Shown piece after piece: positions 35,926 to 59,416 of a stretch of DNA of 64,000 nt. Made by a program: the position numbers and the translations under genes. The notes under the pieces are model-generated. The model was not told the origin of the DNA and did not search any database. It saw only the letters and a list, made by a program, of their open reading frames with translations. The first letter of the stretch is position 1, and each line of letters begins with the position of its first letter. Origin of the DNA: Macrostomum lignano (Eukaryota); assembly GCA_002269645.1 (NCBI GenBank), contig NIVC01001379.1, positions 124,001 through 188,000 on the forward strand, written 5' to 3'.

Positions 35926-38900
35926 ATGGCAGCCAACTTTCTCTCACTGCCCCCACCTGAGCCATTTTCAGTATCAGCAGACCCACACAACGCGGGCAAG
36001 CGCTGGAGTCAATGGGCAGACCGCTTTGAAGACTTCATCGATGCATCAGGCATCACCAACGAGAAGCAAAAGTGCAAACTACTCAGCTACACAGCAGGCA
36101 AGGAAATCGCCGACATCATCCGCGAGGAGGCCAAGCCTGCAGCGGCCACAGAGGACGGCCAAGTCACCCTCAAGCAGACGCTGGAAGCTTTGAAGACATT
36201 CTTCAACGGAAGAAAGAACATAGTATTCGCCAGATATCAGTTCCGCCTATGCACCCAGGCCACCGGGGAGTCCATCGAGTCCTGGTACGCCAGACTGCGC
36301 ACTGCGGCAGAGCCGAGCGACTTCGAGAAGCTGAAGGACTCGCTCATCAGAGACCAGCTCGTGGCAACCTGCAGCTCTGACAAGCTGCGCAGGCGGCTGC
36401 TTCAGGAGGCGAACATCAGCCTGGAAGAGGCCTTGCGAAAGGCGAGGGCATTCGAGGCTGCTGAGGAACAAGCCACCGAGATGGAGAAGACAGACTCGCA
36501 CGTGGCCAGCGTTGCCAAGGGCGACAAGGTGAGAACAAACAGGTGTGGCCCGGCTCAGACGACCAGCAGGCCCGGCGACCAGCAGCAGCGCACCTGCTAC
36601 CGCTGCGGCGAGAAAGGCCACGCTACCTGCGACGCTGCCAAGGGCAAGATCTGCCACAACTGCGGCAAGCCCAACCACCTCGCTCTTGCCTGCCGTCAGC
36701 CTCGGCAGTCAAACAGCAGCCGGATCCCACAGCAGCAAATCAGCACCAATGCTGTATTCACAGCTGCCGACGGCTCCGTCAACGAGGATGTGTTCGCGCT
36801 GTACAACCGCGACAAATACCCATCCGACGTCTCACTGACTGTGCAGGTGGCAAACCGGCAGCTTCCCATGATGATTGACAGCGGAGCCAGCTGCAGCATC
36901 ATGAGTCTCGGCACCTTCAGAGCGCTCAGCCTGCCAAGCCCACGCCCAACAAGAGCCGAAGTTCGCGCCTACGGGGTACCGACACCTCTCAGGATTGTGG
37001 GTACCGCCGATCTTGACATCCAAGTGGGATCTGCCAGAACAACCGCGACCTTCCACATCATGGACGGCGACGGGCTGACGATACTAGGGCGTCAGCCCGC
37101 ATTCAAGCTAGGAGTGCTGAAGATCCAGCGACCTGAAGCTACCAAGCCGCAAAACATAAACGCCATCGCCGACACCACACCCTCCGAGCAGTGTAGCGAC
37201 CCCCAGCTCAAGGCCATCCTGCAGAGGCACAAAGAAGTCTTCAACGGACGAGCTCAAGGCTTTGGAAGAGCAAGGCATCATTGAGGCAGTCAAAGGTCCT
37301 AGCGCCTGGGTGTCACGCATGGTGGTGGTGCCCAAGGGCGACGGTGGCGTTCGAATCTGCCAGGACCTCCGTGATCTCAACGCTTTCGTCATCCCAGAGA
37401 AGCAGCAAATCCCCACGCTGGACGAAATCACCGAGGAAATAGCAGACGCCAAGCTGTTCAGCGAACTCGATATCCGGAAGGCTTTTTATCAGATCCCAGT
37501 CCACGAGAGCAGCCGTCACCTCTTCACCTTCAGCACGCCCCTCGGACTGATGCGGCTCAAGAGGTTCAGCATGGGGTTCACAAATGCCTCGGAAATCCTT
37601 CAACGAGTCATGCTTGGCATCCTCAGCGGCATCGACGGCGTCCGGTGGGCGCACGACGACGTGGTGGTATACGCCTCCGACCTGAAGCAGCACCATGAGA
37701 GGCTGGACGCCTGCCTTCAGCGCCTCCGAGAGTTCGGGATCACCATCAATCAGGACAAGTGCAGGTTCGCCCGACCGACTGTCGAGTTTCTCGGGATGCG
37801 CCTGACCGCCCGGGGCATGCAACCGGCCACCGAGAAAATTGACGCCATGCAGAACTTCCGAGAGCCCTCCAACGTGGCCGACGCCCGCTCTTTCCTGGCA
37901 AAGTCATCCCAAACTTCGCTGACCTCGCGGCCCCACTCCGGCAGCTAACGAAGAAGGGCCAGGCCTGGGAGTGGACAGAAAAACACAAAGCGGCGTTCAA
38001 CGGCATCAAGAAGGCATTCTCAGACGCGGACACGCTGGCCTTTTTCGACCGCAGGCTGCACACGGAGCTCCTGGTGGACGCATCGCCGATCGGCCTCGGC
38101 GCCATCCTCACGCAGCGGCAGCCAGACGGCAACAGCAGACCCGTCGCCTACGCCAGCAGAGCCCTCTCGCCGGTGGAGCAGCGGTACGCGCAGATCGAGC
38201 GGGAGGCGTTGGCCATCAAATTTGGGTGTCTCAAGTTTGAGCACTATCTGGCTGGCGACCCAGACTTCACCGTGGTGACGGACCACCGACCGCTCGTGCC
38301 GCTTTTCAAGCCTGGCTCCCGTCCGCCACCGCGGATTGAGCGTATGGCACTGCGCATTCAGCATCTCCGCTTCAACCTGCTCTACCGGCCAGGCTCGACC
38401 AACCTGGCTGACCTGCTGAGTCGGCAGCCACTGCCAGAGCGGCGTCGGAATGTCGGTGAAGAGCTCGACGCCGCCTTCATCAACGCCGCGTCGACCGGGG
38501 CCGTGCCGAAGGGCTTCAGTCTCGACCAGGTTCGGGAAGCATCGCTCACCGACAGGGACGTCCAGGCGGCGCTGAACGCGATTCGAACCGGCCGCTGGGA
38601 CATGCGAGCGGCGGCCCAGCGCTCCTTCAAGTCCATCAGCAGCGAACTGTCGGAAAGCGACGGAGTATTACTCCGCGGTGACCTCATCGTCATCCCCGAG
38701 TCGCTGCGCAGGCCGATCCTTCAACTGGCGCACACCGGTCATCTGAGCGCCGACCGCACCCTTAAACGCCTGCAGACGAAGGTGTGGTGGCCTCGGATGC
38801 GCAGCGACTGCGAGCTCTTCGTCCAGTGCTGCACACTGTGCCAGGCTGCGGCCACCGGATTGCGACAGACACCATTGAGGCCGACAGATATTCCGGACGG

Positions 38901-41389
38901 TGCCTGGCTGCTGCTAGGTATGGATTTCTACGGCCCAGTGCAGGGCCAGATGCTCCTGGTCACCACCGACTTGTATTCAAAATACCCAGAAGTCAATTTT
39001 CTCAACTCGACGACGGCGGAGAGCGTGATCCCCCACCTGCGGAGGCTGTTCGGCAGATACGGCGTCCCGATTGAGGTGGTCACCGACAACGGCCCGCCAT
39101 TCAGCTCGGCAGCTTTCCGCAGCTAATTCCTCGCTTCGTACGGCATTCAACACCGCCTCATCTGCCCGCTGCACCCAGAATCCAACGGAGCGACGGAGCG
39201 AGTCAACCGCAGCATCGGGAAAGTGATTCAGACGGCAGTGGCCGAAGGTCGTAACTGGCGGGAGGCTATCGAGGACTGGCTGTTGGCGTTCCGCACGACA
39301 CCACATCGAGCGACCGGCCGCGCACCCGCTGAGCTACTCATGGGCAGGACGATGAACGACGGCATCCCGACCATCAAACCATCACAGCTCATCGACGTTA
39401 ACCATGAAGAGGTGCAGAGCTGGCACAGAAACTATGTCCAAGACATGAAGGCGCGCTTCGATGATCGCAAGGGTGTCAAAGAGCACGGCGTCAGAGTCGG
39501 CAACAAAGTTCTGCGAAAGAAGCAACCACGTAACAAACTGCAGCTGCCGTTGGAGCCACATCCTTGGACAGTCAAGCAGGTCCAGGGAGACACGTGTGTC
39601 CTGCAACGCGGCGAACAGTCCTGCATGCGCCACGTCTCGCAGCTGCGGCCCCTGGTCGGAGACCCTGCCGGCCAACCTGCCGGAGAGCCTGCCGGCCAGC
39701 CTGCCGGCCAGCCTGCCGGCCAGCCTGCCGGCCAACCTGCCGGAGAGCCTGCCGGAGAGCCTGCCGGCCAACCTGCAGGAGAGCCTGCCGGCCAGCCTGC
39801 CGGAGAGCCTGCCGGCCAACCTGCCGGCCAGCCTGCCGGAGAGCCTGCCGGCCAGCCTGCCGGCCAACCTGCAGGAGAGCCTGCCGGCCAGCCTGCCGGA
39901 GAGCCTGCCGGCCAGCCAGGTCCAGGTCCAGGGAGACACGTGTGTCCTGCAACGCGGCGAACAGTCCTGCATGCGCCACGTCTCGCAGCTGCGGCCCCTG
40001 GTCGGAGACCCTGCCGGCCAACCTGCCGGAGAGCCTGCCGGCCAGCCTGCCGGCCAACCTGCCGGAGAGCCTGCCGGAGAGCCTGCCGGCCAACCTGCAG
40101 GAGAGCCTGCCGGCCAGCCTGCCGGAGAGCCTGCCGGCCAACCTGCCGGCCAGCCTGCCGGAGAGCCTGCCGGCCAGCCTGCCGGCCAACCTGCAGGAGA
40201 GCCTGCCGGCCAGCCTGCCGGAGAGCCTGCCGGCCAGCCTGCCGGCCAACCTGCCGGCCAGCCTGCCGGCCAACCTGCCGGAGAGCCTGCCGGCCAACCT
40301 GCAGGAGAGCCTGCCGGCCAGCCTGCCGGAGAGCCTGCCGGCCAGCCTGCCGGCCAGCCTGCCGGCCAGCCTGCCGGCCAACCTGCCGGAGAGCCTGCCG
40401 GCCAACCTGCAGGAGAGCCTGCCGGCCAGCCTGCCGGCCAACCTGCCGGAGAGCCTGCCGGCCAACCTGCAGGAGAGCCTGCCGGCCAACCTGCCGGCCA
40501 GCCTGCCGGCCAACCTGCAGGAGAGCCTGCCGGCCAGCCTGCCGGCCAACCTGCCGGAGAGCCTGCCGGCCAACCTGCAGGAGAGCCTGCCGGCCAGCCT
40601 GCCGGCCAACCTGCCGGAGAGCCTGCCGGCCAGCCTGCAGGAGAGCCTGCCGGCCAGCCTGCCGGCCAACCTGCCGGAGAGCCTGCCGGCCAGCCTGCCG
40701 GAGAGCCTGCCGGCCAACCTGCCGGCCAACATGCCGGAGAGCCTGCCGGCCAACCTGCAGGAGAGCCTGCCGGCCAGCCTGCCGGCCAACCTGCCGGAGA
40801 GCCTGCCGGCCAACCTGCAGGAGAGCCTGCCGGCCAACCTGCCGGCCAGCCTGCCGGCCAACCTGCAGGAGAGCCTGCCGGCCAGCCTGCCGGCCAGCCT
40901 GCCGGAGAGCCTGCCGGCCAACCTGCAGGAGAGCCTGCCGGCCAGCCTGCCGGCCAACCTGCCGGAGAGCCTGCCGGCCAACCTGCAGGAGAGCCTGCCG
41001 GCCAAACTGCCGGCCAGCCTGCCGGCCAACCTGCAGGAGAGCCTGCCGGCCAGCCTGCCGGCCAACCTGCAGGAGAGCCTGCCGGCCAGCCTGCCGGCCA
41101 ACCTGCCGGAGAGCCTGCCGGCCAGCCTGCCGGAGAGCCTGCCGGCCAGCCTGCCGGCCAGCCTGCCGGCCAACCTGCCGGAGAGCCTGCCGGCCAACCT
41201 GCCGGAGAGCCTGCCGGCCAACCTGCAGGAGAGCCTGCCGGCCAACCTGCCGGAGAGCCTGCCGGCCAACCTGCAGGAGAGCCTGCCGGCCAACCTACCG
41301 GTCAGCCCGCCGGTCTATCCAGCGGTAGCATCGCCACGCGAGAACACCAAAGAGCTGCCCGTAACAGAGTGCTCAGCTACAAATTGTGA
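35926..41389 (+). pseudogene. Disrupted gag-pol polyprotein of the Gypsy element
   Basis: Zinc knuckles CYRCGEKGH and CHNCGKPNHLALAC; protease MIDSGAS; RT (RICQDLRDLN, WAHDDVVV); RNase H (VDASPIGLGAIL, YAQIEREALA); integrase HHCC and DFYGP/TDNGPPF/ERVNR. Lesions: deletion and frameshift near 37248 and 37898, in-frame TAA at 39124, and a tail duplication near 39920. Confidence 0.92.
39664..41308 (+). repeat. 12-bp coding minisatellite encoding (PAG[Q/E])n in the integrase C-terminal tail
   Basis: Roughly 130 units of CCTGCCGGCCA(A/G), CCTGCCGGAGAG or CCTGCAGGAGAG, split by a duplicated 90-bp unique segment. Confidence 0.95.
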
Positions 41390-41749
41390 TTGCTTTGGGG
41401 TTTGGGCTGGTAGTAACTGAGTAATTGAGCTCGTTTTTTTATCCCCTGCGATCTCTCTGGTTGGGGAGAATTGTAGGCACCTGCTGCCCAGTGCTTGCAT
41501 AATAAGTGATTTTAGTCCTGGTGTGCATTTCCGATGTACATCCAATATTCTTGGCTTTCTGTTTTTAATGTACGCAGTCTCAACTGCAGGGTCGCTGCTA
41601 AATATATAAATCGATCGCACAGAGCCTACAGTGGATTGAGGCTTTATTTGGCTACACACAACACATAGCTTTCTCTCTCTCGGCTTCGCTCTCTACAGTT
41701 TTGTCACTCATTTTTTTAATATCTTCGGAAACCATACATGTAGATCGAG

Positions 41750-43029: not shown

Positions 43030-44060
43030 TTTTATCGCACTGGGCGCCACCTTTTATTTGACTGGGCGCCACTTTTTTATTTGACTGGGCGCCACACTTT
43101 TATTTGACTGGGCGCCACACTTTTAGTTGACTGGGCGCCATTAGAGCTGACTGGGCGCCATTAGAGCTGACTGGGCGCCATTAGAGCTGCCTGGCCGCCA
43201 TTAGAGCTGACTGGGCGCCATTAGAGCTGCCTGGCCGCCATTAGAGCTGACTGGGCGCCATTAGAGCTGCCTGGGCGCCATTAGAGTTGACTGGGCGCCA
43301 GTATAGCTGCCTGGGCGCCAGTATAGCTGACTGGGCGCCATTAGAGCTGCCTGGGCGCCATTAGAGCTGCCTGGGCGCCAGTATAGCTGCCTGGGCGCCA
43401 GTATAGCTGCCTGGGCGCCAGTATAGCTGACTGGGCGCCAGTATAGCTGACTGGGCGCCAGTATAGCTTCCTGGGCGCCAGTATAGCTGACTGGGCGCGT
43501 TAGAGCTGACTAGGCGCCATTAGAGCTGCCTGGCCGCCATTAGAGCTGCCTGGCCGCCATTAGAGCTGCCTGGCCGCCATTAGAGCTGCCTGGGCGCCAT
43601 TAGAGCTGCCTGGGCGCCAGTATAGCTGCCTGGGCGCCAGTATAGCTGCCTGGGCGCCAGTATAGCTGACTGGGCGCCAGTATAGCTGCCTGGGCGCCAG
43701 TATAGCTTCCTGGGCGCCAGTATAGCTGACTGGGCGCATTAGAGCTGACTAGGCGCCATTAGAGCTGCCTGGCCGCCATTAGAGCTGCCTGGCCGCCATT
43801 AGAGCTGACTGGGCGCCATTAGAGCTGCCTGGGCGCCATTAGAGCTGACTGGGCGCCATTAGAGCTGCCTGGGCGCCAGTATAGCTGCCTGGGCGCCAGT
43901 ATAGCTGACTGGGCGCCATTAGAGCTGCCTGGGCGCATTAGAGCTGCCTGGGCGCCATTAGAGCTGCCTGGGCGCCAGTATAGCTGCCTGGGCGCCAGTA
44001 TAGCTGACTGGGCGCCATTAGAGCTGCCTGGGCGCATTAGAGCTGCCTGGGCGCCATTGT
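43030..44060. repeat. 20-bp minisatellite (GACTGGGCGCCATTAGAGCT)n
   Basis: Tandem units visible directly. Confidence 0.95.
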
Positions 44061-44559
44061 TTAGCTTCGTCTCGAGGCGCGAGGTGACCGCGTGGAGTGC
44101 GAGAGGGCCTGTAAGAGGCTCCCCAAGTGTATTCCTCAATACAGCTGTTCCTATCGAGTTAGCAACAATAGCTATGTTTCGCATCATCACTGACGGTAGT
44201 GTTGAGTCTGATCATTTCTTGCTTTTTCTATGCTCGGTTTCTGCAAACTGCGGTATTTTGAATTAAATTAACAAGTCTCACCTGCATATAAGTGAGGGCA
44301 AGCAAGGGGGCATTGCCATTGACTCTGTGGAAGGGTGCTGTTTAGCAACTAAAACCATGGTTTTTTAAGTAAAATTTTTCACGTATTTATATGCTCTACG
44401 AGATTTTGGATAACCAGTTTAGCCACTAAATAATGAGAATACGATGCACAGGTAACATTGAGGAAAGTAGGAAAAATAAGACTTTCTGCTGATCATTGTT
44501 ACATTTGGAGGTTAAACCAGGTGGAAGGGACAACCAGTTTAATGGAGGGAGGCAATTAC

Positions 44560-44820
44560 CAGATAGGGGGGCAAACCACTTGGGGATAAACCAGTTGGGG
44601 GGACACTAGTTGGGGGGGAATCTGTTGGGGGGAATCAGTTGGGGGACAGGTGGAGGGCAAACAAGGTGCAGGTGGGGACAAAGCAGGTGGGGGACAAAGC
44701 AGGTGGGGACAAAGCAGGTGGGTGACAAAGCAGGTGGGTGACAAAGCAGGTGGGGACAAAGCAGGTGGGGACAAAGCAGGTGGGGGACAAAGCAGGTGGG
44801 GACAAAGCAGGTGGAGACAA
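44560..44820. repeat. 15-bp G-rich minisatellite (GTGGGGACAAAGCAG)n
   Basis: Tandem units visible directly. Confidence 0.9.
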
Positions 44821-44980
44821 AACTTCGCAGCGAGGCCAGGTGGCCAATAGCAGCGAACGGTTTGGCGGCTTTCTACAAAAGAGCAGAAAAGCCAGCCCGA
44901 ACTGGTGGAAGCCAATCAAATTCGCCGTCCAGATGCGCAGCCTCAGGGGTCCGTGGCTCGGGCACGGGCGGAGCGGTCTG

Positions 44981-44987
44981 TATAAAT
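44981..44987 (+). promoter_or_regulatory. Putative TATA box of the neuropeptide gene
   Basis: TATAAAT in a GC-rich context about 110 nt upstream of the ATG; AATAAA near 45928 lies downstream of the stop. Confidence 0.5.
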
Positions 44988-45094
44988 GCACCCAACGCTG
45001 GCAGGCAGTTCGGTCGCGTCCCAGCTATCGAAGTCTCCCGCACAGCTCCGATCAGCAATCAAATCCAGTCAAATCAACTCAGAGCTCAACAACA

Positions 45095-45824
45095 ATGCGC
45101 GTCGGAGTCATCGGTCTCGTCCTCTGCGCCGTGCTGGTGCTGATGCAGTGCGCCTTCGCCCAGCAGTTCCACTTTAGCCACGGTAACTGCAGTTCATATA
45201 ATGGCCGTTTGTTACATTAAACTTGCTACAAACTTGCTATCTACAATGAATTGCTACCATTTCAGGAGTTAACGGTAAAACTTCTCAGTAAATTACCTCT
45301 ACATTACTTGTACCAATGTACATACCGGTATACCGATTATTATTTGCTTTGGCAACAAATCACTCGCTTGTATAGTTTGGTTAAGCATGGCAATATTCGC
45401 CTCTGTGCTTTATAACTAACAATCACTAATTCGATTGAGTACATAGCCTACTCAAGTTAGGTGCGACAACTACTTGTACTTAAACGTAACGTCGCAGGTT
45501 GGAAGCCCGGCAAGCGCGGCCTGGCCGAGGAGGGCCACGCTGGCCATCAGATCTTCCGGCTGAAGAAAGGCTACCACTTCTTCCGCCTGAAGAAGGACCA
45601 GGAGTGCGCCATCGGCGAGGAGGCCCGGGCGCTGCTGGCCGATATTGTGGTCAGTTTTTTGCTTCCGTTTAAAAACGCGCATCAATACCAGCAAACCACT
45701 CTACTATAAGTAGAAAAATACGAATATTTGTATTTTTTCTCCGTTTGTACAGAAATCTACCCAGAGCGGCTCGCTGTGCCCGGCAGACAGGCAGGTGATT
45801 GCCGCGTTCGTGCAGAACCTCTGA
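45095..45824 (+). CDS. Corazonin/invertebrate-GnRH-type neuropeptide precursor (103 aa); exons 45095-45182, 45498-45649, 45753-45824
   Basis: Signal peptide MRVGVIGLVLCAVLVLMQCAFA followed directly by QQFHFSHGWKP-GKR, predicted pQQFHFSHGWKP-amide (compare mollusc/annelid QNYHFSNGW.. and QAYHFSHGWFP). Then GHQIFRL-KK and GYHFFRL-KK, then a tail with two Cys. GT-AG introns in phases 1 and 0. Confidence 0.9.
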
Positions 45825-46599
45825 GAACGGCATCGGGACAGCTGATGGCAGCCGGATGACTTGTCAGCATCGGCAACAGCAAAACAACTGCACACTTTTT
45901 ATTGTCTTAACTGTGACTGATATATGGAATAAACAAATATACGAGGCATGCTTGTGAAGATGGAATGATTGAATATTCGCCATCGTTACAGCAATTTGAC
46001 CTCATCTAACAGTGTTGCATGAAACAATTGTAACTGCTTTTTAATTATTCTGGAGTTGAGAAAGTGGAATAACACTGATGGGGAAGAGAGGAGACTGGGG
46101 AGGCAGAGTGCCACTGATGGAGAGAGAGGAGACTGGGGAGGTGGAGTGCCACTGATGGAGAAGAGAGGAGACTGGGGAGGTAGAGTGACACTGATGGGGA
46201 GAGAGGAGACTGGGGAGGCAGAGTGGCACAGGTGGGGAAGAGAAGAGATCAGGGATACTGATGTGGAGGATACGTGTAATGTAAAAAAACTAAGAAAGCA
46301 ATGAGACACGGTAAGACTGCAACAGATATTACAGACGATAAACTTTATGTTAAATTTTTACCATTTGAAATGAGGACTTGCACGCGGCACAAAGGCGTGC
46401 ATCAGCAAAGTATGATTATTATTATTATTATTAACAATATTTTCATAAAATAAAAATGCAACACTTGCATTGCACTGCGCATACAGAGGCATTGTGAACC
46501 AATTTGCGCAGAAATTTTATAAGCAAAAATATCAACAGGGTTTACAGTCTTATGGGCCAATTTATGTCGATGTGCAAAACCCGCCTAACAGGTGGGATA

Positions 46600-46830
46600 A
46601 TAATCCTAAATGAGATCGCACTAGCGTAACGGGTAGGATAATAATCCTCAATGGATAGCCCATATTCTAACAGGTAGGATAATAATCCTCAATGGGATCA
46701 CACTTAATCTAACAGGCGGGATAATAATCCTCAATGGGATCACACTTAATCTAACAGGTAGGATAATAATCCTCAATGGGATCACACTTAATCTAACAGG
46801 CGGGATAATAATCCTCAATGGGATCATATA
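46600..46830. repeat. 42-bp minisatellite (CTAACAGGTAGGATAATAATCCTCAATGGGATCACACTTAAT)n
   Basis: About 5 units. Confidence 0.9.
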
Positions 46831-47306: not shown

Positions 47307-50300
47307 CTGCATATTTAGGTACAGGAAGGTAGAGAAGCGGTATGAACTACTGTAAGTAGCGAAATTGAATTTTACATATTTTCAAAAATTTTACTTCATA
47401 AAATATTTCCAAACAGCTGAAATTGATAAATATTAGGTGTTAAATTGACGGGGCAAAATCCGACAGTGTGGAATCTGGCACAAACTAGGTAGGTCATGGT
47501 GAATGACCACAGAATGATCCTTTTGATAAGCATCAATAAATTCAATGATATTCAATGATATTGCTGACTGAGTAGCAGAGCTCACTCAGAGACATTGGGG
47601 ATTGAGTAGCGGAGCTCACTCATGGACATTGGGGATTGAGTAGCGGAGCTCACTCAGGGACATTGGGGATTGAGTAGCGGAGCTCACTCAGGGACTCACT
47701 CATGGACATTGGGGATTGAGTAGCGGTGCTCACTCAGGGACATTGGGGATTGAGTAGCGGTGCTCACTCAAGGACATTGGGGACTGAGTAGCGGTGCTCA
47801 CTCAGGGACATTGGGGATTGAGTAGCGGAGCTCACTCAGGGACTCACTCAAGGACATTTGGGATTGAGTAGCGGTGCTCAATCAGGGACATTGGGGATTG
47901 AGTACCCAGAGCTCACTCAGGGACATTGAGCATTGAGTAGCTCAGTCACTCAGACTCTCCAACCAGTAGCAAGACTCTCTCACCCGCTTCCATCTGCCAC
48001 TCTTTGCAGCAGACTTTCTACGCACAATAATCCACTTAAGTTCGTAAGCAAAGTATTTTGAAATTTTGCCTGAAAATTGAATTATCAGAATTAATCTATT
48101 TTCAAGCAGAGTATAAAAAGCAAAAAACTTACAATACTATTCAAGCGAGTTTGCCATGTCAGCCCAAAAGAGCTACGTTTAAATTTTTTATATTTAATAA
48201 GACCTGATGGCACAAAAACTTTTTTTATTTAGTAGATCATTTTAAGTTTTAGGACTACTTGCATTAGTACATGTGTATGCAGAAGATGGAAACAGTGTAG
48301 GTACCCAAGGCCCAGTGTCAATGTACATTTGTGGGGCTTGTGCCAGTTCAGTGGGGGAAGGGAGACACTGTACGGTAAGGGAAGGCCCAGTGTCAATGTA
48401 CATTGGTGGGGCTTGTGCCAGTTCAGCGGGGAAGGGAGACACTGTACGGTAAGGGAAGGCCCAGTGTCAATGTACATTGGTGAGGCTTGTGCCAGTTTAG
48501 CGGGGAAGAGAGACAGTGTACGGTAAGGGAAGGCCCAGTGTCAATGTACATTGGTGGGGCTTGTGACAGTTCGGCGCGGGGAGAGACAGTGTACAAAAAG
48601 TCGAGGCCCAGTGTCAATTTACACTTGAAAAAAATCTAGTCAAAAACCGATCTGGAAGGATGCCTTGTGGCTGTTTTAAATTCTCATAATTACCGACTTC
48701 ACTCGATAAGAGCGCCAGGCACGCCTTCGCTTATCCATAACAAATTTTCTCTCCGAGTCAAATGACGTCTTCATCTTGTCGCTGGCAGCTGGGGGAATCG
48801 ATTTGTAATAGATAATAACACAAATAAAATTTACAGTGGGAGACTAAAGCTAGCAAGGGCAGAGATTGACAGAGACAGGCAGCTTAAGACAGGCAACTGA
48901 CCACGCGCAATCGGGCAGACTTTCTGGCTGTCCGCCGGTTGTACAAAATCATATGGGCCAATCGGCTGTGAAAAATTTCCACGTTAGCTAAAATAATTAT
49001 AATAGCAATATAATTGATATACAGATAACTGCAGTAATTAGCGCACAAGCCCACACTGAAAATGCTGCTGCCTTAAAAAACGCTGCAATATGAATTTGAT
49101 AATTCCTATCGTCCAAATTTTGAATAATGCTGTTTTTAGCTTGCAAGTGGGAGATGGCTATAAGCATTGAATATTAATTAAATGGAAATTGTCATTGAAA
49201 CCTTAAAAACCTCCAGGAACTCCATCTCCGCACACACAGTGCACATCGCAGATACTATGCCACTCAGGCATATTCAATACATACTTAGTAAAACAGCTTT
49301 CTACTTTCAGTTCAGTAGCAAAGAAGAATACATAAGCTATTTTATAAGAATAAAGGCCGCTGAAATGACTTTGATAAGTTTAGAAGCCCAAGCTTGCAGG
49401 CGTAAACAATTTGCTAGCTAATTAGTTAAGCAGTAATGTACATTAGCCAGTCCACTGAAATGTACATGGCAGCTTTAGGCTGGAATTCCGAGAAAGGCAA
49501 TAAAAATTGGGCGTAGTGTGTAAAGGGGGCTGTTGGAGGGTTTAAGCTAGGGGGGTAAGAGCCAATAAAAAGAGCCTTGGCTTTAAAAATACCATAAAAT
49601 GCTTCTGTTTAGCTAACTACTGAACTGAAAGTAGTTTATACGAAACGTGCTTTGTGGCCCATCTAGTTATTATCTATCTCACGTAGATCTTTGGTGCACA
49701 CACAGACAAACTGGCAGGCCACACACATCTCCCAACACAGGCACTAACCACGCGGAGTCGGCCAGCTCGTTTAGCAGTTCTCCGATTAGACAATACAATA
49801 TTGCCCAGCCGCCTGTGGAACTGTTCTGTGCTGGCTAAAATATTTCATGAGAAAATATTTATATATACATATATGCTAATGTATATAGATCTGCTTTTAA
49901 AAGCAAATTAGCAGAATGCTGTCACAGTGCTGCCAAAAAAAACGCTGCTGCTTTTTTATTTAAAAAATAATTGCATGGTGGAGTTGTGTTTTAAACTGCC
50001 TCAGAGGCCAGGGACCACTGGAAGGTCAGGTGCTCAGGACTAACCTAGCTGTTCAGTCTCAGGTGTTCAGGACTAACCTAGCTGTTCAGTCTCAGGTGTT
50101 CAGGACTAACCTAGCTGTTCAGTCTCAGGTGTTCAGGACTAACCTAGCTGTTCAGCCTCAGGTGCTCAGGACTAACCTAGCTGTTCAGTCTCAGGTGTTC
50201 AGGACTAACCTAGCTGTTCAGTCTCAGGTGTTCAGGACTAACCTAGCTGTTCAGCCTCAGGTGTTCAGGACTAACCTAGCTGTTCAGCCTCAGGTGCTGA

Positions 50301-59112: not shown

Positions 59113-59416
59113 NNNNNNNNNNNNNNNNNNNNNNNNNNNNNNNNNNNNNNNNNNNNNNNNNNNNNNNNNNNNNNNNNNNNNNNNNNNNNNNNNNNNNNNN
59201 NNNNNNNNNNNNNNNNNNNNNNNNNNNNNNNNNNNNNNNNNNNNNNNNNNNNNNNNNNNNNNNNNNNNNNNNNNNNNNNNNNNNNNNNNNNNNNNNNNNN
59301 NNNNNNNNNNNNNNNNNNNNNNNNNNNNNNNNNNNNNNNNNNNNNNNNNNNNNNNNNNNNNNNNNNNNNNNNNNNNNNNNNNNNNNNNNNNNNNNNNNNN
59401 NNNNNNNNNNNNNNNN
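59113..59416. other. Assembly gap (304 N)
   Basis: Run of n; it truncates the gene A terminal exon. Confidence 1.

What the first reader, a model, noticed from the sequence alone, without database searches (positions are those of the whole stretch)
45095..45824. Corazonin/GnRH-type precursor that co-encodes two extra ...FRL peptides
SEEN: signal peptide, then QQFHFSHGWKP-GKR (an intron splits the Gly codon, so the ORF track misses it), then ...GHAGHQIFRL-KK and GYHFFRL-KK, then a two-Cys tail. KNOWLEDGE: GnRH/AKH/corazonin precursors normally carry one bioactive peptide directly after the signal peptide, followed by an associated peptide. I recall GYHFFRL-type peptides from planarian prohormones, which needs verifying. 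INFERENCE: this precursor may link the corazonin family to a flatworm-specific FRL peptide family, with two signals co-released from one gene.
Basis: partly seen in the sequence, partly recalled or inferred. Interest (0 to 1): 0.72.

Follow-up and report, generated by a model that had tools for sequence, protein, structure and literature searches.

The report
Flatworm corazonin/FRL neuropeptide precursor gene
This is the Macrostomum lignano copy of a flatworm neuropeptide gene described in planarians in 2010 (Smed-grh-1), which encodes a corazonin/GnRH-like peptide plus two "FRL" peptides; the one new detail is a 9-base micro-exon that lengthens the hormone by three residues.

Summary
Window 45095-45824 (+) holds a GT-AG spliced gene encoding a signal peptide, QQFHFSHGWKP-GKR, GLAEEGHAGHQIFRL-KK, GYHFFRL-KK and a two-Cys tail.

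The window is Macrostomum lignano contig NIVC01001379.1, gene Mlig008027.g2, annotated only as "hypothetical protein".

The composite design is not new:
- Its relatives are Stylochoplana and Notocomplana "GnRH-2" and Schmidtea grh-1. All have the same corazonin-type peptide + 2 FRL + Cys-tail layout.
- Collins et al. 2010 grouped grh-1, spp-18 and spp-19 as "FRL-containing". They detected GYHFFRL and KHIGHQIFRL by mass spectrometry.
- FRL-only genes (three M. lignano families, spp-18/19, schistosome npp-28) share both intron positions and phases with this gene, so they are paralogues that lost the corazonin part.
- The Cys tail aligns with the associated peptide of mollusc, annelid and nemertean corazonin-type precursors and is predicted to be a helical hairpin.

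The GenBank model of this locus uses it, giving QQFHFSHG-VNG-WKP (14-mer). Only one partial model supports the 11-mer junction. A polyclad cDNA carries an insertion at the same site.

Verdict: new member of a known kind, of modest interest.

The parts
44981..44986 (+). TATAAA motif upstream of the gene. It is only a candidate core promoter, because annotated 5' ends scatter between about 44960 and 45023.
   Evidence: The motif is conserved in homeolog L001. Its function was not tested.
45095..45160 (+). Signal peptide coding (MRVGVIGLVLCAVLVLMQCAFA), with predicted cleavage AFA|QQ.
   Evidence: translation. AlphaFold predicts a helix at residues 2-24. The A-x-A rule for cleavage is applied from general knowledge.
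45161..45182 (+). 5' half of the corazonin-type peptide (QQFHFSH plus the first base of the Gly codon). This is the end of exon 1; the donor is ACG|gtaact.
45266..45274 (+). 9-nt micro-exon GAGTTAACG (tttcag|...|gtaaaa). It inserts V-N-G, giving QQFHFSHGVNGWKP.
   Evidence: One search finds the candidate. Searches show that PAA68647.1, the model of this locus, is the exact 4-exon translation. Models g1 and g4 also read VNG. The micro-exon lies in the longest perfect run of intron 1 against the homeolog.
45498..45517 (+). 3' half of the corazonin-type peptide ((G)WKP), then the amidation Gly and the KR cleavage site. This is the start of exon 2.
45518..45568 (+). FRL peptide 1, GLAEEGHAGHQIFRL, plus the KK site.
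   Evidence: It is homologous to KHIGHQIFRL of Smed-SPP-19, which was MS-detected.
45569..45595 (+). FRL peptide 2, GYHFFRL, plus the KK site. The coding unit is 21/27 nt identical to FRL unit 1.
   Evidence: The identical peptide was MS-confirmed in Schmidtea, as KR.GYHFFRL.KK and KR.GYHFFRL.RK.
45596..45649 (+). First half of the C-terminal two-Cys associated peptide (DQECAIGEEARALLADIV). This is the end of exon 2; the donor is GTG|gtcagt.
45753..45824 (+). Exon 3: the second half of the Cys tail (KSTQSGSLCPADRQVIAAFVQNL) and the TGA stop. It follows a phase-0 intron at 45650-45752.
   Evidence: The intron position is conserved in M. lignano paralogues and in S. mansoni npp-28.
45928..45933 (+). 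AATAAA polyadenylation signal, 104 nt after the stop codon.
   Evidence: In homeolog L001 the hexamer reads AATAAT.

Best explanation
The locus is the Macrostomum lignano orthologue (Mlig008027.g2) of planarian Smed-grh-1 and polyclad 'GnRH-2'. It is a neuropeptide prohormone of the lophotrochozoan corazonin type ('invGnRH/CRZ').

Shown:
- The gene structure.
- Its identity with an RNA-seq-based GenBank model.
- Homology to the flatworm family.
- Conserved introns.
- A conserved tail that is predicted to fold.

Inferred mechanism. The preprohormone enters the secretory pathway and the signal peptide is removed after AFA. Prohormone convertase then cuts at KR and at the two KK sites, and carboxypeptidase trims the basic residues. 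The N-terminal Gln cyclises and the Gly-extended end is amidated. The expected products are:
1. A corazonin-type peptide. According to the annotated mRNA this is mainly the 14-mer pQQFHFSHGVNGWKP-NH2. If the micro-exon is skipped, it is the canonical 11-mer pQQFHFSHGWKP-NH2.
2. GLAEEGHAGHQIFRL.
3. GYHFFRL.
4. A 41-residue disulfide-bridged helical-hairpin peptide.

All four would be co-packaged and co-released from the same neurons.

Evolution. The Cys tail is the ancestral corazonin-associated peptide. In flatworms the spacer between GKR and the tail became two FRL peptides. Duplicates then lost the corazonin part and became FRL-only prohormones (spp-18/19, npp-28, Mlig013730, Mlig024884, Mlig016149).
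For: - Gene model and composition.
- Window equals NIVC01001379.1 and PAA68647.1 is the exact 4-exon translation.
- The annotation derives from RNA-seq (StringTie/TACO/BLAT).
- Relatives: Stylochoplana GnRH-2 E 2.5e-13; Smed-grh-1 1.7e-11; Mlig013730 3.6e-11; Smed-spp-19 2e-09. The family contains only Platyhelminthes.
- Family alignment with invariant H-F-R-L, C and D columns.
- Collins 2010: grh-1 predicted peptides; the 'FRL-containing' family; GYHFFRL and KHIGHQIFRL MS-detected; cleavage flanks KR|..|KK, KR|..|RK and KK|.. observed; grh-1 expressed in restricted CNS cells.
- Identical intron positions and phases in the window gene, two M. lignano FRL-only paralogues and S. mansoni npp-28.
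- The short form matches pQNYHFSNGWYA-NH2 of Lymnaea (MS-verified) at 6 of 11 positions. Capitella has QAYHFSHGWFPGRKR.
- Tail-to-tail profile alignment with non-flatworm corazonin-type precursors, both Cys aligned, E 3.2e-4.
- AlphaFold: tail pLDDT 93-95 as a helix-loop-helix; peptide region disordered.
- Exons 0-2.8% diverged against about 10% in intron 1 between homeologs.
Against: - No peptide, expression or receptor data exist for M. lignano itself, so processing is inferred from planarians.
- Pfam GnRH, AKH and Corazonin models are below threshold for the 103-aa form (E 0.04 and 0.11) and silent for the 106-aa micro-exon form.
- The micro-exon interrupts the canonical HFSxGW core, so the main product may not behave as a corazonin-receptor ligand.
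- The tail homology to non-flatworm precursors has only 39% hhalign probability.
- The N-terminal flank of GYHFFRL here is KK, whereas the MS-confirmed planarian cases have KR.
Confidence: 0.82

Rival explanations
1. The micro-exon is constitutive. The canonical 11-mer is never made, and the only N-terminal product is the 14-mer QQFHFSHGVNGWKPamide. This 14-mer could be a diverged or decaying corazonin peptide on the same path as the FRL-only paralogues, so that the FRL peptides and the tail are the functional cargo.
For: - Three of four GenBank models, including the one at this locus, contain VNG.
- The only VNG-less model (g6, P0004) is a partial fragment. It could be a mapping artefact, because BLAT cannot place 9 nt.
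- Copy g1 has the same 9 nt fused to exon 1. That would be expected if micro-exon-containing RNA-seq reads dominated the Pilon polishing.
- Paralogues show that the corazonin part is dispensable.
- Pfam hits vanish with the insertion.
Against: - Skipping restores a perfect canonical HFSHGW-KPG-KR core that matches polyclad, annelid and mollusc peptides.
- The pQ start, the amidation Gly and the KR site are all intact.
- Exon 1 and exon 2 are 0-0.7% diverged between homeologs, which indicates constraint.
Confidence: 0.35
2. The FRL stretches are not signalling peptides in M. lignano. They would be part of a structural or sorting 'associated peptide', with the KK sites left uncut.
For: - KK is generally a weaker convertase site than KR (general knowledge).
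- The FRL peptides have no amidation signal.
- No M. lignano peptidomics is available.
Against: - GYHFFRL and KHIGHQIFRL were detected by MS in Schmidtea. Cleavage before and after KK was observed there: KR.GYHFFRL.KK and KK.IIDPMTYGTGFSNL.
- The H-x-x-FRL/G-Y-H-F-F-R-L motif with dibasic flanks is the most conserved part of the family, from Macrostomorpha to Trematoda.
- FRL-only paralogues are retained in several lineages.
- The two units differ at synonymous positions but keep FRLKK.
Confidence: 0.08
3. The locus is a non-functional duplicate or an assembly artefact in the redundant polyploid M. lignano assembly.
For: - The assembly has large duplicated blocks.
- Copy g4 carries a 1-nt deletion in exon 2 that gives a frameshifted tail.
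Against: - The window copy has an intact ORF and intact splice sites, and is identical to copy g6.
- It is nearly identical in exons to the diverged homeolog g1, although the introns differ by about 10%.
- RNA-seq-based models exist.
Confidence: 0.03

Closest known systems
Smed-grh-1 (Schmidtea mediterranea gonadotropin-releasing hormone like-1, ADC84439.1; Collins et al. 2010, PMC2953531)
   Same: The order of parts is the same: signal peptide, Q-x-[YF]-HFS-x-x-W-x-P-G-KR, xxGHQ[IM]FRL-KK, G[YF]H[FY]FRL-KK, then a C...C tail. phmmer E is 1.7e-11. It was already classed as 'FRL-containing' and is expressed in restricted CNS cells.
   Different: - Smed has D instead of G before W.
- Smed has no VNG insertion in the cloned cDNA.
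- In Smed the first FRL peptide follows GKR directly (YHTGHQMFRL), whereas M. lignano has the longer GLAEEGHAGHQIFRL.
- The Smed gene structure could not be checked here.
Polyclad 'GnRH-2' (Stylochoplana pusilla BCO16381.1; Notocomplana humilis, P0021)
   Same: These are the best hits (E 2.5e-13). They share QNMHFSNGWQPGKR + THDFFRVRR + VYHFFRLRK + Cys tail. The N. humilis cDNA has an insertion, EPEVSAQSS replacing G, at exactly the Gly codon that the M. lignano intron splits. The first and last inserted codons are compatible with a phase-1 cassette (E = G|AR, S = A|GY).
   Different: - The inserted sequence and its length differ (8 extra residues against 3).
- The dibasic sites are RR/RK rather than KK.
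- The polyclad data are GenBank deposits plus 'unpublished data' in a review.
- No polyclad genome was available here to test for a micro-exon.
FRL-only flatworm prohormones: Smed-spp-18, Smed-spp-19, Sma/Sja-npp-28, and M. lignano Mlig013730, Mlig024884, Mlig016149/021558
   Same: - [GA]YHFFRL with dibasic flanks and a C...C...D[RK]xF/L tail.
- The same phase-1 and phase-0 intron positions.
- GYHFFRL is identical to the MS-confirmed planarian peptide.
   Different: These genes lack the corazonin-type peptide. In Mlig013730 a relic remains at the homologous place (…ANPAAAELGAEGH against …WKPGKRGLAEEGH). spp-18 and npp-28 have only the second FRL unit.
Lophotrochozoan corazonin-type ('invGnRH/CRZ') precursors, e.g. 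Lymnaea pQNYHFSNGWYA-NH2, Platynereis CRZ1, Capitella QAYHFSHGWFP, Lineus, Idiosepius
   Same: - A single N-terminal peptide follows the signal peptide directly.
- pQ-x-[YF]-HFS-x-GW-x-x, Gly-dibasic amidation and cleavage, and a two-Cys associated peptide.
- The tails align, E 3.2e-4.
   Different: - They have no FRL peptides in the spacer, and no non-flatworm hit was found for the FRL module in 1.84 billion representatives.
- Platynereis crz1 has no intron between the Gly and Trp codons; its genomic TALEN target is contiguous there.
- No micro-exon is known.

Membership tests
Corazonin-type (lophotrochozoan invGnRH/CRZ) neuropeptide precursor | A single copy of the peptide lies directly after the signal peptide and starts with Gln (pyroGlu). 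| tested here: met
   MRVGVIGLVLCAVLVLMQCAFA|QQFHF.... A hydrophobic helix is predicted at residues 2-24. The arrangement is the same in the polyclad, planarian, mollusc, annelid and nemertean precursors.
Corazonin-type (lophotrochozoan invGnRH/CRZ) neuropeptide precursor | Core motif x-[YF]-H-F-S-x-G-W-x-x. | tested here: inconclusive
   The motif is met by the micro-exon-skipped form: QQFHFSHGWKP matches pQNYHFSNGWYA at 6/11 positions. It is interrupted (HFSHG-VNG-W) in the annotated mRNA of this locus.
Corazonin-type (lophotrochozoan invGnRH/CRZ) neuropeptide precursor | A C-terminal Gly followed by a dibasic site (amidation plus cleavage). | tested here: met
   ...WKP-G-KR at 45506-45517.
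Corazonin-type (lophotrochozoan invGnRH/CRZ) neuropeptide precursor | An associated peptide with two conserved Cys about 20-25 residues apart. | tested here: met
   C66 and C89 are 23 residues apart. hhalign against 5 non-flatworm precursors aligns both Cys, E 3.2e-4, probability 39%. A helical hairpin is predicted with pLDDT 93-95.
Corazonin-type (lophotrochozoan invGnRH/CRZ) neuropeptide precursor | Recognition by curated family models (Pfam GnRH PF00446, AKH PF06377, Corazonin PF17308). | tested here: inconclusive
   Hits are sub-threshold: AKH 14.8 bits (cut-off 22.9) and GnRH 13.4 bits (cut-off 18.5) for the 103-aa form, and none for the 106-aa form. The accepted relative Stylochoplana GnRH-2 is also sub-threshold (AKH 14.7 bits) and Smed-grh-1 has no GnRH/AKH/Corazonin hit at all. 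These models are therefore too short or too arthropod- and vertebrate-centred to decide.
Corazonin-type (lophotrochozoan invGnRH/CRZ) neuropeptide precursor | The peptide activates a corazonin-type GPCR. | not testable with these tools
   This needs receptor deorphanisation. Polyclads are reported to have one GnRH-type and three corazonin-type receptors (review, unpublished data).
Flatworm FRL-containing prohormones (grh-1 / spp-18 / spp-19 / npp-28) | A G/A-[YF]-H-[FY]-F-R-L peptide flanked by dibasic sites, not amidated. | tested here: met
   KK-GYHFFRL-KK at 45563-45595. The peptide is identical to the MS-confirmed Smed peptide.
Flatworm FRL-containing prohormones (grh-1 / spp-18 / spp-19 / npp-28) | Significant full-length sequence similarity, including the C...C...D[RK]x[FL] tail. 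| tested here: met
   phmmer E values are 2.5e-13 to 5e-05. A profile search retrieves only flatworm members. H, F, R, L, C and D columns are invariant.
Flatworm FRL-containing prohormones (grh-1 / spp-18 / spp-19 / npp-28) | Shared gene structure. | tested here: met
   A phase-1 intron follows the signal-peptide exon and a phase-0 intron lies 5-8 codons before the second Cys. This holds in the window gene, Mlig013730, Mlig024884 and S. mansoni npp-28.
Flatworm FRL-containing prohormones (grh-1 / spp-18 / spp-19 / npp-28) | Mature FRL peptides are present in tissue. | not testable with these tools
   This has been shown only for Schmidtea. M. lignano peptidomics would be needed.

The most novel reading that the evidence does not exclude
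The phase-1 intron in the Gly codon of the flatworm corazonin-type peptide may be an old, reusable insertion point. M. lignano places a 9-nt micro-exon there (VNG), and the polyclad Notocomplana humilis cDNA carries an unrelated 24-nt insertion at the same codon.

If inclusion is regulated, one gene would make two corazonin-type ligands that differ in the middle of the mature peptide (11-mer and 14-mer). These could select among the several corazonin-type receptors of flatworms, on top of the two co-released FRL peptides. A micro-exon that edits the core of a mature neuropeptide would be an unusual way to diversify a hormone.
Probability: 0.2. Interest if true: 0.6.

Novelty: new member of a known kind. 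Interest (0 to 1): 0.3.

Why it matters
- It gives a functional name to an M. lignano gene family now labelled 'hypothetical protein'. Four related families are involved (Mlig008027, Mlig013730, Mlig024884 and Mlig016149/021558), in a species with transgenesis and RNAi.
- Intron evidence, which I did not find in the papers read, shows that the FRL-only prohormones of planarians and schistosomes (spp-18/19, npp-28) are truncated paralogues of the corazonin-type precursor, and that their Cys tail is the old corazonin-associated peptide. This explains the origin of a flatworm-specific peptide family that includes a schistosome gene.
- The micro-exon means that anyone who synthesises the 'obvious' 11-mer for receptor work in Macrostomum may be testing the minor form, or a form that does not exist.
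- None of this overturns current views. Composite grh-1 was published in 2010.

Tried and rejected
- Searching the exact peptide strings in the paper library found nothing in main texts. The information was in the supplements of Collins 2010.
- The first word-index protein search found only the M. lignano cluster itself. Relatives appeared only with the exhaustive phmmer search.
- Pfam models for GnRH, AKH and Corazonin were too weak to decide membership.
- I considered whether the 9-nt insertion at the end of exon 1 in homeolog g1 shows genuine exonisation. I could not decide, because the assembly was Pilon-polished with RNA-seq reads, which can create exactly such an insertion.
- Homeolog conservation around the micro-exon is only weakly informative: a 47-nt perfect run against runs of 35 and 42 nt elsewhere in intron 1.
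- I rejected using the TATAAA at 44981 as a firm promoter call, because annotated 5' ends start both upstream and downstream of it.
I rebuilt the alignment from database proteins.
- I did not look for M. lignano corazonin/GnRH-type receptors, because no reliable query sequence was at hand.
- No other Macrostomum species or polyclad genome is in the available collections.

Full report
**Observation.** Window 45095-45824 (+) holds a small spliced gene.
- Exon 1 is 45095-45182, with donor ACG|gtaact.
- Exon 2 is 45498-45649, with acceptor cgcag|GT and donor GTG|gtcagt.
- Exon 3 is 45753-45824 and ends in TGA.
- Joining these three exons gives 103 aa: MRVGVIGLVLCAVLVLMQCAFA-QQFHFSHGWKPG-KR-GLAEEGHAGHQIFRL-KK-GYHFFRL-KK-DQECAIGEEARALLADIVKSTQSGSLCPADRQVIAAFVQNL.
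- Exons have 61-66% GC and GC3 of 0.87; introns have 34-37% GC.
- An AATAAA lies 104 nt after the stop codon and a TATAAA lies 114 nt before the ATG.

**Source.** The only close database hit is a cluster of Macrostomum lignano 'hypothetical proteins', Mlig008027 g1, g2, g4 and g6. The window is 100% identical over 6.9 kb to contig NIVC01001379.1 of assembly GCA_002269645.1, which carries copy g2. Copies g6 and g4 are identical in this region, except for a 1-nt deletion in exon 2 of g4. Copy g1 is a diverged homeolog.

- Three of the four GenBank proteins read ...HFSHG-VNG-WKPGKR.
- 'Intron 1' contains a 9-nt micro-exon at 45266-45274, tttcag|GAGTTAACG|gtaaaa. It keeps the frame and encodes exactly these residues.
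- GenBank PAA68647.1, the model of this very locus, equals the 4-exon translation of 106 aa.
- The annotation was built from RNA-seq (STAR/StringTie/TACO) and from BLAT-mapped de novo transcripts. Micro-exon inclusion therefore has transcript support.
- The direct 45182>45498 junction is supported only by one partial model (g6, truncated inside exon 2). BLAT cannot place 9 nt, so that model may be a mapping artefact.
- Homeolog g1 has the same 9 nt fused to the end of exon 1 and also keeps the intronic copy. The assembly was Pilon-polished with RNA-seq reads, so this may be an artefact produced by micro-exon-containing reads. I could not decide this.
- Between homeologs, intron 1 differs by about 10% plus indels, and exons differ by 0-2.8%. 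The micro-exon lies in the longest perfect run of intron 1, 47 nt. This is only weak support.

**Relatives.** An exhaustive phmmer search of 1.84 billion representatives found seven relatives. A profile search added more, all of them flatworms.

With a corazonin-type peptide:
- Stylochoplana pusilla 'GnRH-2': QNMHFSNGWQPGKR, THDFFRVRR, VYHFFRLRK, Cys tail; E 2.5e-13.
- Notocomplana humilis 'GnRH-2'.
- Schmidtea mediterranea grh-1: QSYHFSNDWLPGKR, YHTGHQMFRLKK, GFHYFRLKK, Cys tail; E 1.7e-11.

Without a corazonin-type peptide:
- Smed spp-18 and spp-19.
- Schistosome and other trematode npp-28.
- Three M. lignano families: Mlig013730, Mlig024884 and Mlig016149/021558.

The alignment shows invariant H-F-R-L, the first Cys and a D after the second Cys.

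**Literature.** Collins et al. 2010 (PMC2953531) named grh-1 and predicted its peptides: QSYHFSNDWLPamide, YHTGHQMFRL, GFHYFRL and the Cys peptide. They listed grh-1, spp-18 and spp-19 as the 'FRL-containing' family and matched schistosome npp-28 (AYHFFRL). By mass spectrometry they detected GYHFFRL (KR.GYHFFRL.KK and KR.GYHFFRL.RK) and KHIGHQIFRL/HQIFRL. Cleavage after KK was also seen, as KK.IIDPMTYGTGFSNL. grh-1 is expressed in restricted CNS cells. Corazonin and GnRH precursors are also reported from polyclad larvae and reviewed for marine flatworms.

I found no paper on the Macrostomum gene.

**Family relations tested here.** Exact spliced mapping shows the same architecture in four genes: the window gene, Mlig013730, Mlig024884 and S. 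mansoni npp-28.
- A phase-1 intron lies just after the signal-peptide exon.
- A phase-0 intron lies 5-8 codons before the second Cys.
- In Mlig013730 the split codon lies the same 12 codons upstream of G-H-x-G-H-Q-I-F-R-L as in the window gene. A relic, ANPAAA, replaces WKPGKR.

The FRL-only prohormones are therefore paralogues that lost the corazonin part, which straddles intron 1. Platynereis crz1 has no intron at this point, because its genomic TALEN target is contiguous there. The intron therefore appears to be specific to flatworms.

**Relation to corazonin-type precursors outside flatworms.**
- The short form, pQQFHFSHGWKP-NH2, matches MS-verified Lymnaea pQNYHFSNGWYA-NH2 at 6 of 11 positions. 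It resembles Capitella QAYHFSHGWFP.
- Real precursors from a cephalopod, a gastropod, an annelid and two nemerteans (Thiel et al. 2021, supplement) all carry a two-Cys tail.
- A profile-profile comparison aligns that tail with the flatworm tail, Cys to Cys, at E 3.2e-4 and probability 39%.
- None of them has FRL peptides, and the FRL module has no non-flatworm hit.
- AlphaFold predicts the tail as a confident helix-loop-helix (pLDDT 93-95). The peptide region is predicted to be disordered.
- Pfam GnRH and AKH models score below threshold for the short form and give nothing for the long form.

**Mechanism (inferred).** Processing would run as follows:
1. Signal peptide cleavage after AFA.
2. 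Convertase cleavage at KR and at the two KK sites.
3. Trimming of the basic residues by carboxypeptidase.
4. PyroGlu formation and amidation.

The products would be a corazonin-type peptide, two FRL peptides and a disulfide-bridged 41-mer, all co-released. The corazonin-type peptide is the 14-mer according to the annotated mRNA, and the 11-mer if the micro-exon is skipped. My calculation reproduces the planarian GYHFFRL mass of 938.48.

**The unresolved and more novel point.** N. humilis GnRH-2 reads QNMHFSN-EPEVSAQSS-WQPGKR, where Stylochoplana has QNMHFSNGWQPGKR. The insertion replaces exactly the Gly whose codon is split in M. lignano. Its first codon (E = G|AR) and last codon (S = A|GY) fit a phase-1 cassette. 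This suggests, but does not show, that the intron is old and that cassettes at this site arose in two lineages.

**Verdict.** This is a new, unannotated member of a known flatworm prohormone family, with a micro-exon twist that is worth a quick RNA-seq check.

Noticed in passing
L001 (NIVC01000001.1, copy g1), aligned to window 45182/45183: The diverged homeolog has GAGTTAACG inserted at the very end of exon 1 and also keeps the intronic micro-exon copy. This is either real exonisation by duplication or an artefact of polishing the assembly with RNA-seq reads.
   Followed up: partly
P0021 (Notocomplana humilis GnRH-2), no window coordinates: The polyclad cDNA has EPEVSAQSS in place of the Gly of HFSNGW. 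This is the same codon that the M. lignano intron and micro-exon split. The sister sequence from Stylochoplana lacks the insertion.
   Followed up: partly
L010 (ENA ERZ27263986 k141_806384, 2504 bp), gene at 803-2203: An intronless 466-aa ORF on a 34% GC metagenome contig carries 11 copies of [YFH]S..W..GKR (e.g. IHYSNGWNSGKR, QQMHFSNGWVSGKR). Pfam AKH scores 3.5e-15. This is a multi-copy corazonin/AKH-like precursor from an unknown organism, which is unusual because the corazonin-, GnRH- and AKH-type precursors compared here each carry a single copy.
   Followed up: partly
L004 (NIVC01004786.1, copy g4), aligned to window about 45624: A 1-nt deletion in exon 2 (GAGG-CCGGG) frameshifts the tail, so PAA46590.1 ends ...GRCWPIL. 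This is either an assembly error or a decaying copy.
   Followed up: no
window 43039-44058, 44566-44821, 46073-46248, 46585-46826, 47569-47953: The gene sits between tandem-repeat arrays: a 20-mer x 47, a 15-mer x 10 directly upstream of the promoter region, and 38-, 42- and 34-mers downstream. Related arrays flank the homeologous copy g1. Long bacterial-style ORFs across them (e.g. 44556-44991) are repeat artefacts.
   Followed up: partly
window 35926-39126 (+), and 39223-41420: ORFs with gag (PNMA), zinc-knuckle and aspartyl-protease domains, and with RNase H and integrase domains, indicate an LTR-retrotransposon remnant about 6 kb upstream. They are followed by a low-complexity PT-repeat stretch that is open in several frames.
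   Followed up: partly
L005 (NIVC01000195.1, Mlig013730) intron 1, about 1600-1640: The 73-nt first intron of the FRL-only paralogue consists largely of telomere-like CCCTAA repeats.
   Followed up: no
window 59113-59416: A run of 304 N, which is a scaffold gap.
   Followed up: no
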